From Dendrobates tinctorius (taxonomy: Eukaryota), in NCBI RefSeq assembly GCF_039654945.1, contig NW_027362019.1:744001-808000 (forward strand): a DNA stretch of 64,000 bases, written 5' to 3'. A model generated the notes under the pieces. It was not told where the DNA came from, ran no database searches, and saw nothing but the letters and a program-made list of their open reading frames with translations. Made by a program: the position numbers and the translations under genes. Each line of letters begins with the position of its first letter. Within the stretch, counting starts at the first letter, position 1. Below, one piece after another: positions 45,401 through 51,400 of the stretch.

Positions 45401-48400
45401 AGACCTCCAGGAGGCAAAGGCGGCAGCGAGAGAGGGGAAACTGCAGCCGTTACCTGGAGAGACGGTGAGTAACATCAGTGAGACCGCCCGTAACAGGGGA
45501 CGCGGAATAGAATTCTCACTATTGTCTGGCACAGATGGAGAAGTGCTCCCAGGATCTGGGGAGCAGCACAAAAGCCGTGAGCTCGTCCATCGCCCAACTA
45601 CTGGGGGAGATCGTCCATGGGAATGAGAATTACACCGGTACGTAATCTGTCTCTTCTGTGTGTCATACCAACGAGCCCACTTCCTCTGTCTCTTCTGGTT
45701 GGTCTCTTAGTCATTTCCTCTGGCCGGTCTTGTCTCTGGCTCCTCTGGCCGGTCTCGTCTCTGGCTCCTCTGGCCGGTCTCGTCTCTGGCTCCTCTGGCC
45801 GGTCTCGTCTCTGGCTCCTCTGGCCGGTCTCGTCTCTGGCTCCTCTGGCCGGTCTCGTCTCTGGCTCCTCTGGCCGGTCTCGTCTCTGGCTCCTCTGGCC
45901 GGTCTCGTCTCTGGCTCCTCTGGCCGGTCTCGTCTCTGGCTCCTCTGGCCGGTCTCGTCTCTGGCTCCTCTGGCCGGTCTCGTCTCTGGCTCCTCTGGCT
46001 GGTCTCGTCTCTGGCTCCTCTGGCTGGTCTCGTCTCTGGCTCCTCTGGCTGGTCTCGTCTCTGGCTCCTCTGGCTGGTCTCGTCTCTGGCTCCTCTGGCC
46101 GGTCTCGTCTCTGGCTCCTATGGCCGGTCTCGTCTCTGGCCGGTCTCGTCTCTGGCTCCTCTGGCCGGTCTCGTCTCTGGCTCCTATGGCCGCCGGCCTC
46201 CCCACTCTCCTCTGGCCGGTGTATCTCCGTTCCCTCTGGCCAGCTCTGGTTCCTCTTGACGCTGCCGCCCTTCCCTCTGGCCTATCTATCTCTCTCTCCT
46301 ATGGCCGGTCTTTCTCCTCTGTTCGCCCTCCGTCCTCTCTTTCTGGTCTCCTGTCTCCTTTGACCGGTCTTTCTCCTCTGGCTTCCCTCCCAACCCTATG
46401 GCCAGATTCTCTCATGTTCCTTCTCTGTTAGGTCGCGCTGCCCGCGATGTCGCACAGGCCCTGAAGTCTCTGGCACAGGCGAGTCGTGGAGTGGCTGCGA
46501 ATTCTTCAGATCCGGCCGTACAGAATGCCATGCTGGAGTGCGCCGGTGACGTCATGGACAAGGCTGGAAATCTTATAGAAGAAGCTAAAAGGGCGGTGGG
46601 AAAACCTGCTGACGCCGAGGGGCAGCAGAGACTGGCTCAGGTGAGAACTGGGGGTTGCTGCCGTTACTTGTTAGGCGGTTCAGAGGACGTCAATCTAATG
46701 GATTTCTCTGTAGGTGGCTAAAGCAGTGTCTCAGGCGCTGAGCCGCTGTGTGAACTGCCTGCCCGGGCAGAGGGATGTAGATGCCGCCATCAAGAGCATC
46801 GGCGAAGCCAGTAAGAAGCTCCTCGCCAACTCCGTAAGTGACCTCTCCCTACTTCCTCTTCTACTGGTGTGGCTGACCATTCCCTCATCCTCTAGGTGGC
46901 TGACCATTCCCTCATCCTCAAGCGTGGCTTACCATCCCCACCAGTGAGGCTGACCATTCCCTCCCCTCCAGCGTGGCTGACCACCCCCTTTGGCTGACCA
47001 TTCTCCACTCAGTGTGGCTGACCATTCTCTCCACCCAGCGTGGCTGATCACCCTCATGACAAACAATTTCCTCTACCCAGGGTGGTTGACCATGCCGCAT
47101 GGCTGTCCATTCCCTTCCTCAATGTGGCTGACCACCTGCATGCGGCTCTGCTCATGGCCATTACCATCTCTGCTCCTTCCTGTACAGCTGTTACCATCCC
47201 AACCCTATGATAGCTCTGCCTGTTACTTTGTCTTTACTTTTCAGTTCCCTCCCAGCAATAAGAACTTCCAAGAAGCGCAGAGTCAGCTAAACCAGGCGGC
47301 CGCCGGCCTCAACCAGTCGGCTAACGAGCTTGTGCAAGCGTCCCGAGGAACCGCTCAAGACCTGGCTAAAGCTTCCGGGAAATATGGACAGGACTTCAAT
47401 GAGTTCCTTCAGGCAGGAGTGGAGATGGCTGGACAGACACAGGTACGAGGACAGACGCAGGTACGAGGACGTCAGGATATGGCAGGACAGACGCAGGTAC
47501 GAGGACGTCAGGACATGGCAGGACAGACGCAGGTACGAGGACGTCAGGACATGGCAGGACAGACGCAGGTACGAGGACGTCAGGACATGGCAGGACAGAC
47601 GCAGGTACGAGGACGTCAGGACATGGCAGGACAGACGCAGGTACGAGGACGTCAGGACATGGCAGGACAGACGCAGGTACGAGGACGTCAGGACATGGCA
47701 GGACAGACGCAGGTACGAGGACGTCAGGACATGGCAGGACAGACGCAGGTACGAGGACGTCAGGACATGGCAGGACAGACGCAGGTACGAGGACGTCAGG
47801 ACATGGCAGGACAGACGCAGGTACGAGGACGTCAGGACATGGCAGGACAGACGCAGGTACGAGGACGTCAGGACATGGCAGGACAGACGCAGGTACGAGG
47901 ACGTCAGGACATGGCAGGACAGACGCAGGTACGAGGACGTCAGGACATGGCAGGACAGACGCAGGTACGAGGACGTCAGGACATGGCAGGACAGACGCAG
48001 GTACGAGGACGTCAGGACATGGCAGGACAGACGCAGGTACGAGGACGTCAGGACATGGCAGGACAGACGCAGGTACGAGGACGTCAGGACATGGCAGGAC
48101 AGACGCAGGTACGAGGACGTCAGGACATGGCAGGACAGACGCAGGTACGAGGACGTCAGGACATGGCAGGACAGACGCAGGTACGAGGACGTCAGGACAT
48201 GGCAGGACAGACGCAGGTACGAGGACGTCAGGACATGGCAGGACAGACGCAGGTACGAGGACGTCAGGACATGGCAGGACAGACGCAGGTACGAGGACGT
48301 CAGGACATGGCAGGACAGACGCAGGTACGAGGACGTCAGGACATGGCAGGACAGACGCAGGTACGAGGACGTCAGGACATGGCAGGACAGACGCAGGTAC

Positions 48401-51400
48401 GAGGACGTCAGGACATGGCAGGACAGACGCAGGTACGAGGACGTCAGGACATGGCAGGACAGACGCAGGTACGAGGACGTCAGGACATGGCAGGACAGAC
48501 GCAGGTACGAGGACGTCAGGACATGGCAGGACAGACGCAGGTACGAGGACGTCAGGACATGGCAGGACAGACGCAGGTACGAGGACGTCAGGACATGGCA
48601 GGACAGACGCAGGTACGAGGACGTCAGGACATGGCAGGACAGACGCAGGTACGAGGACGTCAGGACATGGCAGGACAGACGCAGGTACGAGGACGTCAGG
48701 ACATGGCAGGACAGACGCAGGTACGAGGACGTCAGGACATGGCAGGACAGACGCAGGTACGAGGACGTCAGGACATGGCAGGACAGACGCAGGTACGAGG
48801 ACGTCAGGACATGGCAGGACAGACGCAGGTACGAGGACGTCAGGACATGGCAGGACAGACGCAGGTACGAGGACGTCGGGACATGGCAGGACAGACGCAG
48901 GTACGAGGACGTCGGGACATGGCAGGACAGACGCAGGTACGAGGACGTCGGGACATGGCAGGACAGACGCAGGTACGAGGACGTCGGGACATGGCAGGAC
49001 AGACGCAGGTACGAGGACGTCGGGACATGGCAGGACAGACGCAGGTACGAGGACGTCGGGACATGGCAGGACAGACGCAGGTACGAGGACGTCGGGACAT
49101 GGCAGGACAGACGCAGGTACGAGGACGTCGGGACATGGCAGGACAGACGCAGGTACGAGGACGTCGGGACATGGCAGGACAGACGCAGGTACGAGGACGT
49201 CGGGACATGGCAGGACAGACGCAGGTACGAGGACGTCGGGACATGGCAGGACAGACGCAGGTACGAGGACGTCGGGACATGGCAGGACAGACGCAGGTAC
49301 GAGGACGTCGGGACATGGCAGGACAGACGCAGGTACGAGGACGTCGGGACATGGCAGGACAGACGCAGGTACGAGGACGTCGGGACATGGCAGGACAGAC
49401 GCAGGTACGAGGACGTCGGGACATGGCAGGACAGACGCAGGTACGAGGACGTCGGGACATGGCAGGACAGACGCAGGTACGAGGACGTCGGGACATGGCA
49501 GGACAGACGCAGGTACGAGGACGTCGGGACATGGCAGGACAGACGCAGGTACGAGGACGTCGGGACATGGCAGGACAGACGCAGGTACGAGGACGTCGGG
49601 ACATGGCAGGACAGACGCAGGTACGAGGACGTCGGGACATGGCAGGACAGACGCAGGTACGAGGACGTCGGGACATGGCAGGACAGACGCAGGTACGAGG
49701 ACGTCGGGACATGGCAGGACAGACGCAGGTACGAGGACGTCGGGACATGGCAGGACAGACGCAGGTACGAGGACGTCGGGACATGGCAGGACAGACGCAG
49801 GTACGAGGACGTCGGGACATGGCAGGACAGACGCAGGTACGAGGACGTCGGGACATGGCAGGACAGACGCAGGTACGAGGACGTCGGGACATGGCAGGAC
49901 AGACGCAGGTACGAGGACGTCGGGACATGGCAGGACAGACGCAGGTACGAGGACGTCGGGACATGGCAGGACAGACGCAGGTACGAGGACGTCGGGACAT
50001 GGCAGGACAGACGCAGGTACGAGGACGTCGGGACATGGCAGGACAGACGCAGGTACGAGGACGTCGGGACATGGCAGGACAGGTGACAGAGGGACATACA
50101 GAGGCGCTATAGAGAGGAGTGTGTGACAGGAGGATGTTCCCAGGTGCATTCTGCAATGGTTCCCGTCTTTTACCTGCAGAACAAGGAGGATCAGGCGCAG
50201 GTGGTCTCCAACCTGAAGAGCATCTCCCTGTCATCCAGCAAGTTACTTCTGGCAGCGAAAGCTCTGTCTGCTGATCCTGCCGCCCCCAACCTGAAGAGCC
50301 AGCTCGCGGCTGCCGCCAGGTGAGTGTGAGGGTGGCCAGGGAGATAATCTGTGCACAGTATCATACCGACCAGTACACTGTGTGCATGTTATATCATAAT
50401 GCTCTGCCTCAGTATGGGCGGAGTATAGCGGTATATAGTGTTGTGCCGCCTCAGTCTGAGAGGAGGGTAATGCTATATAGCGTATTGTCACCTAATTGTG
50501 GGTCGAATATATGGTGTATAGCATAGTGCCGCCACGGTGTGGGTGGAGTTTAATGGTATATATTATTGGTGGAGTATATCTGTATATAGCGTAGTGCCGC
50601 CCTTGTGTGAACGGAGTATAATGGTATATAGCGTAGGACCACCTCGTTTTGGGTTGAGTATAATGATATATACTGTAGTGCTGCCTCGGTGTCGGAGTAT
50701 AATGGTATATAGCAAGTGTAGTGAGGCCTTGGTGTGGGTGGAGTATAACAGTATATATAGCGTGGGGTCGCCTCGGTGTGAGCGGAGTATATTGGTATGT
50801 AGCATAGTGCCGCCTCGGTGTGAGCGGAGTATATTGGTATGTAGCATAGTGTCGCCTCGGTGTGAGTGGAGTATATTGGTATGTAGCATAGTGTCGCCTC
50901 GGTGTGGGCGGAGTATATTGGTGTGTAGCATAGTGCCGCCCTTGTGTGAGCTGAGTATATTGGTATGTAGCATAGTGCCGCCTCGGTGTGAGCGGAGTAT
51001 ATTGGTATGTAGCATAGTGTCGCCTCGGTGTGAGCGGAGTATATTGGTATGTAGCATTGTGCCGCCTCGGTGTGAGCGGAGTATAATGGTATGTAGCATA
51101 GTGCCGCCTCGGTGTGAGCGGAGTATATTGGTATGTAGCATAGTGTCGCCTCTGTGTGAGCGGAGTATATTGGTATGTAGCATAGTGTCGCCTCTGTGTG
51201 AGCGGAGTATAATGGTATGTAGCATAGTGCCGCCTCGGTGTGAGCGGAGTATATTGGTATGTAGCATAGTGTCGCCTCTGTGTGAGCGGAGTATAATGGT
51301 ATGTAGCATAGTGCCACCTCGGTGTGAGCGGAGTATATTGGTATGTAGCATTGTGCCGCCTCGGTGTGAGCGGAGTATATTGGTATGTAGCATAGTGCCG

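What the first reader, a model, noticed from the sequence alone, without database searches (positions are those of the whole stretch)
47425..50112. Splice-donor array: exon end plus 5' splice site amplified 73 times, all in frame with talin R6
Seen: the 36-bp unit contains the last 18 nt of the exon (ATGGCAGGACAGACGCAG, MAGQTQ) followed by the same donor hexamer GTACGA. Donors recur at 47461+36k (k=0..72) after the ancestral one at 47443, and a further in-frame CAG|GTGACA lies at 50083. The first spacer is 18 nt and the unit is 36 nt, so every donor is phase 0. The frame has no stop until 50110-50112, and the next exon (50180) starts in phase 0. Inference: splicing from any copy would give full-length talin-1 with a variable VRGR(Q/R)DMAGQTQ repeat insert of up to ~880 aa, at about residue 1292 inside rod domain R6. 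This is either a possible ladder of length isoforms of a mechanosensor or a natural test of how one of 74 locally equivalent donors is chosen.
Basis: partly seen in the sequence, partly recalled or inferred. Interest (0 to 1): 0.9.

Follow-up and report, generated by a model that had tools for sequence, protein, structure and literature searches.

The report
Intronic minisatellite copying a talin splice donor
A 36-base repeat that copies the end of a talin-1 exon and its splice signal 73 times is really there, but the assembled messenger RNA uses only the original first signal; this arrangement is already known from human genes such as F7.

Summary
A 36-bp × 73.2 array lies at 47448-50082. It gives 74 identical CAG|GTACGA donors, all in phase 0, with the frame open to 50110.

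The isoform-ladder reading is not supported. In Logan contigs of three public RNA-containing runs from three studies, the tln1 transcript leaves the exon at 47442 and continues with the first 27-30 bases of exon 50180. That is the ancestral donor. No contig covers 47443-47486.

The in-frame, stop-free property carries little weight. All three forward frames of the array are open, and 44% of the window is minisatellite (25 arrays). About 0.7 arrays spanning a donor are expected by chance in this gene.

The kind is already described. Borensztajn et al. 2006 (PMC1557585) cover the human F7 intron-7 37-bp minisatellite and list IFI6/6-16, CBS, LMNB2 and PDGFA. There the most upstream donor wins, with at most the two nearest pseudo-sites also used.

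The scan has noted the same thing at eight or more other genes of this genome, on other DNA.

Still open: low-level use of the nearest pseudo-donors (47461, +6 aa; 47497, +18 aa). The insertion point is the helix 3-helix 4 loop of rod domain R6. The copy number has not been checked on DNA reads.

Verdict: a new, unusually large member of a known kind, of modest interest.

The parts
47245..47442 (+). tln1 exon encoding talin-1 residues about 1229-1292 (rod domain R6, helices 2-3). Its last 21 nt (GAGATGGCTGGACAGACACAG) are the zeroth, diverged copy of the repeat unit.
   Evidence: PDB match. Contigs of X1 and X23 cover 47245-47442 exactly and X19 covers 47325-47442, all with no other letters. 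Exon end compared with the unit.
47443..47448 (+). Ancestral 5' splice site GTACGA (CAG|GTACGA), the donor used in the assembled mRNA.
   Evidence: Loose ends at 47442 in X1, X19 and X23 read AACAAGGAGGATCAGGCGCAGGTGGTC..., which equals window 50180 onward. Relatives' read-through ORFs also start the intron with V-R codons (GTN CGN/AGR).
47443..47460 (+). Half-length first copy (18 nt). It is a unit lacking the internal 18 nt between two GAC repeats, and it places the first pseudo-donor at 47461.
   Evidence: Sequence. TRF row with period 18 at 47431-47506.
47461..50082 (+). The 36-bp minisatellite in donor register: 1 + 38 Q-type + 33 R-type units plus a truncated last unit. It carries 73 pseudo-donors CAG|GTACGA at 47461+36k, is 69% purine and has 3 CpG per unit.
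   Evidence: The Q-type unit is present as a closed 66-nt cycle contig in X1, X19 and X23.
50083..50179 (+). Unique 3' end of the intron. It starts with an in-frame CAG|GTGACA, holds the first in-frame stop at 50110-50112, and ends in the pyrimidine tract and acceptor ...ttttacctgcag|.
50180..50319 (+). Next tln1 exon (talin-1 residues about 1293-1339, R6 helix 4), joined to 47442 in the mRNA.

Best explanation
This is a young, lineage-specific intronic minisatellite. Its founding unit happened to span the exon-intron junction of a tln1 exon: 21 nt of exon end plus the first 15 nt of the intron. Slippage or unequal exchange then expanded it to about 73 copies, in two perfect blocks that differ by one A/G, so it carries 73 exact copies of the 5' splice site into the intron. 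Splicing ignores them. The exon is closed at the first donor downstream of its acceptor (exon definition, or 5'-to-3' 'oriented scanning'), and the whole array is removed as part of a 2.7-kb intron. The in-frame, stop-free property is a by-product: the unit length is a multiple of three and the unit is purine-rich with no stop in any forward frame. Shown here: the anatomy, the use of donor 47442 in the dominant mRNA, and the abundance of such arrays in this gene. Inferred: the origin by slippage, the selection rule, and neutrality.
For: Anatomy. Splicing: the long contigs of X1 (5.9 kb, depth 80) and X23 (6.6 kb, depth 31) join 46638>46712 and 46833>47245, then leave at 47442 with the first 30 bases of exon 50180. 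X19 shows the first joint and the exit at 47442 on separate short contigs. No contig covers 47443-47486. In X1 the repeat-cycle contig has word depth 3.2 against 80.4 for the exons, although each word stands 38-73 times in the gene. So mature mRNA carries on average no more than 0.04 repeat units. Background: 44% of the window is tandem arrays (25 arrays), several of them 97-100% homogeneous, and 10 of the 20 arrays of 200 bp or more have periods that are multiples of 3. This array is open in 5 of 6 frames. With uniform seeding about 0.7 arrays spanning a donor are expected in this gene. No protein among 1.84 billion representatives holds the repeat peptide. About 20 relatives' contigs read from the same exon into unique intron sequence, so they have no array at this junction. 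[quoted passage not shown] The scan's notes list eight more minisatellites derived from exon-intron junctions in this genome (unchecked).
Against: All RNA evidence comes from assembled contigs, which keep the dominant path and drop minor branches. A +18-nt or +54-nt isoform could be hidden even at a substantial share. In X19 the repeat contig has depth 68 against exon depth 2-4 with no neighbouring intron assembled, and this is only loosely explained by copy-number inflation of intronic or DNA signal. Only three runs were laid, of unknown tissue, and a fourth (X21) gave nothing. The IFI6 and CBS precedents do use the two nearest pseudo-sites, and here the nearest lies only 18 nt away.
Confidence: 0.8

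Rival explanations
1. Leaky proximal pseudo-donors. Besides 47442, the nearest copies (47461, 47497 and perhaps 47533) are used at a low or tissue-specific level. This would give talin-1 with +6 aa (VRGQTQ), +18 aa or +30 aa in the helix 3-helix 4 loop of R6. The products are in frame and so not removed by nonsense-mediated decay.
For: The donors are identical from -3 to +10. In IFI6/6-16 and CBS the authentic site plus the two nearest pseudo-sites are used (introduction of PMC1557585). The first pseudo-donor is only 18 nt downstream. The insertion point is a surface loop in a confident model (pLDDT 91), and the loop varies in length among fishes. Contigs cannot exclude a minor branch.
Against: No contig in three runs holds the words across 47442/47443 that such isoforms need. 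In F7, LMNB2 and PDGFA only the authentic site is used. No protein with the extension turned up in two database searches, although proteins of this species were not reached.
Confidence: 0.17
2. A true ladder of long-insert talin isoforms, spliced from donors deep in the array, with tens to hundreds of VRGR(Q/R)DMAGQTQ repeats.
For: Every donor is in phase 0 and the frame is open for 880 codons. The repeat words have high depth in X19.
Against: In X1 the repeat words reach 4% of the exon depth in total, which leaves about 0.1% or less for isoforms with tens of copies. The long contigs of X1 and X23 and a short one of X19 take 47442. Internal exons of 0.3-2.8 kb are poorly defined in vertebrates (general knowledge). 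The open frame is trivial because all forward frames are open. No such protein is on record.
Confidence: 0.02
3. The array, or its length, is an assembly artefact.
For: Two perfectly homogeneous blocks of 38 and 33 units are hard to assemble and could not be verified here. No DNA run was laid.
Against: Three independent runs from three studies hold the unit as a closed 66-nt cycle, which requires at least two tandem copies. Other arrays of the window are as homogeneous. The scan notes similar arrays across the genome.
Confidence: 0.05

Closest known systems
Human F7 intron 7 37-bp minisatellite (Borensztajn et al. 2006, PLoS Genet, PMC1557585)
   Same: The first monomer spans the exon-intron boundary. 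The authentic donor is followed by identical pseudo-donors, and only the most upstream site is used. The unit length is nearly the same (37 versus 36 bp).
   Different: F7 has 5-9 copies with 4 nt of exon per unit and most pseudo-sites out of frame. Here there are 73 copies with 21 nt of exon per unit and all of them in frame. Whether the pseudo-sites work was shown by mutagenesis in F7 and has not been tested here.
Human IFI6 (6-16) intron 2 minisatellite (Turri et al. 1995, as cited in PMC1557585)
   Same: A minisatellite supplies many tandem splice donors: 25 pseudo-sites after the authentic one.
   Different: In IFI6 the two proximal pseudo-sites are used constitutively. Here no such use is seen in contigs. 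The original paper could not be read.
Human CBS intron 13 31-bp VNTR, LMNB2 100-bp and PDGFA 81-bp junction repeats (as cited in PMC1557585)
   Same: The exon/intron junction is reiterated 10-20 times in the intron. Only the authentic donor is used in LMNB2 and PDGFA, and the authentic donor plus two pseudo-sites in CBS.
   Different: They have fewer copies and are in different genes. They are known to me only through the citing paper.
ABCA7 intron 18 VNTR (De Roeck et al. 2018, PMC5954066)
   Same: An intronic VNTR near a donor that bears on splicing.
   Different: I saw only the title and abstract line and did not read the paper. There the VNTR length is associated with altered splicing and disease risk. 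Nothing of that kind is shown here.

Membership tests
Minisatellite whose first monomer spans an exon-intron boundary (F7 IVS7 type) | Tandem array of 10-100-bp units lying in an intron directly after an exon | tested here: met
   TRF gives period 36, 73.2 copies, 47448-50082. The exon ends at 47442.
Minisatellite whose first monomer spans an exon-intron boundary (F7 IVS7 type) | The unit contains the exon end plus the 5' splice site, so the authentic donor is reiterated exactly | tested here: met
   There are 74 CAG|GTACGA sites. The unit holds 21 nt like the exon end (3 mismatches) plus GTACGAGGACGTCAG.
Minisatellite whose first monomer spans an exon-intron boundary (F7 IVS7 type) | The most upstream (authentic) donor is the one used in mRNA | tested here: met
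   Contigs of X1, X19 and X23 leave at 47442 and continue with exon 50180. This shows the dominant form only.
Minisatellite whose first monomer spans an exon-intron boundary (F7 IVS7 type) | The pseudo-sites are silent although functional | tested here: inconclusive
   No contig uses them, and in X1 the repeat words reach 4% of exon depth. Contigs drop minor forms, and function needs minigene mutagenesis.
Minisatellite whose first monomer spans an exon-intron boundary (F7 IVS7 type) | Copy number is polymorphic (VNTR) | not tested
Talin-1 (TLN1) rod domain R6 | Sequence match of both flanking exons to solved talin-1 R6 | tested here: met
   2l10 and 6r9t, E 3e-27 and 6.5e-17, residues 1229-1292 and 1295-1339.
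Coding tandem repeat or alternative-donor ladder | Repeat-containing mature mRNA or protein exists | tested here: not met
   No contig links the exon to the repeat. No protein with the motif is found among 1.84 billion representatives, nor in a word-based search.

The most novel reading that the evidence does not exclude
This genome appears to hold many junction-derived minisatellites: tln1 with 74 donors, and by the scan's unchecked notes MAD2L1BP with about 110, MRPL37 with about 31, ROGDI, EIF1AD, perlecan and others. Together they would form a replicated natural experiment on 5' splice site choice. In the in-frame cases such as tln1, the nearest pseudo-donors (here 18 and 54 nt downstream) may leak and give small NMD-immune insert isoforms in a loop of talin R6.
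Probability: 0.17. Interest if true: 0.45.

Novelty: new member of a known kind. Interest (0 to 1): 0.27.

Why it matters
The result takes away the more striking reading, a mechanosensor with a ladder of lengths. It files the locus under a known class: junction-spanning minisatellites in which the first donor wins. What remains of value is scale. Seventy-four identical in-frame donors, against 5-26 in the human examples, extend the first-donor rule over 2.6 kb, and this genome seems to offer many such loci. The array also gives built-in backup. By analogy with the F7 patient mutation, loss of the authentic donor should shift splicing to the next copy. Here that would add only six residues, in frame, in a loop.

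Tried and rejected
- **Full-stretch read lay.** On the tool's own advice I laid 46200-47790 instead, so the acceptor side and the R-type half were never laid.
- **Run X21.** This run (organism C) gave no contigs.
- **Representative-protein search.** Searching with the 955-aa read-through ORF gave top hits of 12-46% identity that are unrelated periodic proteins. None holds the repeat motif.
- **First word-based protein search.** With a teleost talin and a region filter it returned only teleost talins. The window's own species, about 70-80% identical, was not reached, so annotated isoforms could not be inspected.
- **Second word-based protein search.** With exon plus first repeats it found only single-exon fragments from relatives, at most 91% identity.
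- **Open frame as a sign of coding.** Rejected, because all forward frames are open.
- **RNA structure masking the pseudo-donors.** The array folds better than shuffles (z -4.6) because GACGTC and GTAC are palindromes. The fold is a long weak mismatched hairpin, and I draw nothing from it.
- **Turri et al. 1995.** The paper is not held.
- **A second donor-spanning array.** The array at 15933 starts 26 nt after its exon and does not include the donor.
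Full report
**1.

- The window reads exactly as described. Tandem Repeats Finder gives one array at 47448-50082 with period 36, 73.2 copies and 99% matches.
- Counting CAGGTACGA gives 74 sites. The GT lies at 47443, at 47461, and then every 36 nt to 50053.
- In donor register the array has four parts:
  - one unit with GATATG;
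  - 38 identical units with CAGGAC (Q type);
  - 33 identical units with CGGGAC (R type);
  - one truncated unit that runs into CAG|GTGACA at 50083.
- The exon end GAGATGGCTGGACAGACACAG is a diverged zeroth copy of the last 21 nt of the unit, with 3 mismatches. The first intronic copy is a half unit of 18 nt.
- The frame from 47245 stays open to TAG at 50110-50112.
- The two flanking exons match solved talin-1 at residues 1229-1292 and 1295-1339 (2l10, 6r9t). Both start and end in phase 0.

**2. What the messenger RNA does**

- RNA runs holding the stretch were found. All are kept as assembled Logan contigs.
This covers two upstream exons, the exon in question and the first nine or so units.
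- In X1 (contig of 5.9 kb, depth 80.4) and X23 (6.6 kb, depth 30.6) one contig joins 46638 to 46712 and 46833 to 47245. It then leaves the window sequence exactly at 47442.
- X19 is shallower (depth 2-4). A 178-nt contig carries the 46638 to 46712 joint, and a separate 145-nt contig leaves at 47442.
- The letters that follow 47442 are AACAAGGAGGATCAGGCGCAGGTGGTC(TCC), the first bases of exon 50180.
- No contig in any run covers 47443-47486. Any transcript that reads past the first donor would need that unique link between exon and array.
- So the dominant mRNA uses the ancestral donor.

**3. The repeat in these runs**

- Each of the three runs also holds a 66-nt contig that is the closed cycle of the Q-type unit (36 + 30 for 31-letter words). 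This shows independently that a tandem array of this unit exists in the organism.
- Its word depth is 3.2 in X1, 24.9 in X23 and 68 in X19. Each word stands 38-73 times in the gene.
  - In X1 the mature mRNA carries on average no more than 0.04 units. That leaves about 0.1% or less for isoforms with tens of copies.
  - X23 gives about 2% per copy, which is ordinary intronic signal.
  - X19 gives 25-45% per copy while the neighbouring single-copy intron is not assembled. Total or nuclear RNA, or DNA carry-over below the assembler's threshold, fits this. I could not exclude another source of the unit.
- Contigs keep the main path and drop minor branches. They therefore do not bound a +18-nt or +54-nt isoform from the two nearest pseudo-donors.

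**4. Is the in-frame, open array more than chance?**

- No.
- The window is one gene, tln1, on the + strand from about 6374 to beyond 54675 (tblastn with two fish talins).
- 44% of the window lies in 25 tandem arrays. Several are 97-100% homogeneous.
- Ten of the 20 arrays of 200 bp or more have a period that is a multiple of three.
- This array is open in all three forward frames and in two reverse frames. The absence of stops follows from a 69%-purine unit, not from selection.
- If founding units fell uniformly over the gene, about 0.7 arrays spanning a donor would be expected here.
- The scan's own notes list eight more junction-derived minisatellites in this genome: MRPL37, HGD, perlecan, ODAD3, ROGDI, EIF1AD, MAD2L1BP and one unnamed. 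I did not check them. They agree with the expectation that such arrays are common in this genome.

**5. Age**

- About 20 read-through ORFs from relatives' contigs (66-93% identical in the exon) continue from the same exon into unique sequence. Most begin with V-R, that is GTN followed by an arginine codon.
- The donor type is therefore old, and those relatives have no array at this junction.
- The perfect identity within two blocks that differ by one A/G points to very recent expansion by slippage or unequal exchange. This is inference.

**6. Comparison with what is known**

- Borensztajn et al. [quoted passage not shown]
- In human F7 intron 7 a 37-bp unit gives 5-9 identical donors, and only the most upstream is used. 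[quoted passage not shown] The authors call this 5'-3' oriented scanning, and exon definition contributes as distance grows.
- Their introduction lists four further cases:
  - IFI6/6-16: 25 pseudo-sites, with the authentic site plus the two nearest used;
  - CBS intron 13: 15-20 repeats, with two pseudo-sites used;
  - LMNB2: only the authentic site used;
  - PDGFA: only the authentic site used.
- The tln1 array meets the defining features I could test. It is an intronic array that abuts the exon, its unit holds the exon end plus the donor, and the first donor is used.
- Whether the pseudo-sites are silent at low level, and whether copy number is polymorphic, remain untested.
- The array is larger than the cited examples (74 donors over 2.6 kb), and every site is in frame.

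**7. If a pseudo-donor were used**

- An AlphaFold model of gar talin R6 (pLDDT 91, pTM 0.87) gives the five-helix bundle. It puts the exon junction in the loop between helix 3 and helix 4, at residues 88-92 of the model.
- That loop differs in length among fishes.
- A six-residue insert (VRGQTQ, from donor 47461) would sit in a loop and is plausibly tolerated. Hundreds of residues would be a large disordered loop. This is inference.
- TLN1 was long held to make a single isoform until the 51-nt exon 17b was reported (PMC9997659, seen). A further insert isoform would be of some interest, but nothing here shows one.

**8. Verdict**

- The structure is real. The isoform-ladder reading is not supported.
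- The natural-test reading is correct but is an established paradigm, and it gives the expected answer here.
- I rate it a new, unusually large member of a known kind. The open residue is possible low-level use of the nearest pseudo-donors. I put that at about 17%, and a long-insert ladder at about 2%.

Noticed in passing
window 1-64000: 44% of this tln1 window lies in 25 tandem arrays with periods of 22-180 bp. Many are 94-100% homogeneous and some reach 5.3 kb (6613-11895, 49 bp × 108). Intron length in this gene is largely minisatellite.
   Followed up: partly
window 4103-4398: A perfectly homogeneous 24-bp × 12.3 array whose unit holds two telomere-like TTAGGG repeats (TAGGGTTAGGGTTGAGGCTAAAGT), upstream of the first talin exon seen in the window.
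   Followed up: no
window 46638-46712: A very short 73-nt GT..AG intron between two tln1 exons, confirmed by spliced contigs in three runs.
   Followed up: yes
window 47694-47759 (repeat cycle contig), run X19: The repeat words have depth 68 while the tln1 exons have 2-4 and the neighbouring intron has 0. This may be copy-number inflation of intronic or DNA signal, or a second source of the unit.
   Followed up: partly
window 47380-47680: The array RNA folds better than shuffles (-75.8 kcal/mol, z -4.6), because the unit holds the palindromes GACGTC and GTAC. The fold is a long, weak, mismatched hairpin.
   Followed up: partly
window 15907-17143: A 25-bp × 47 array starts 26 nt after the donor of exon 15828-15906. 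It lies close to the junction but does not include it.
   Followed up: yes
runs X5-X18 (organism B): A second organism holds 21% of the sampled words of 47200-50400, presumably conserved exon words of a relative. Whether it has the array was not tested.
   Followed up: no
P0247 (Scleropages talin-1), residues near 1292-1300: The loop at this exon junction is two residues shorter than in other fishes (MAGQPQEDQ versus MAGQSQSKEDQ), so the loop length is naturally variable.
   Followed up: no
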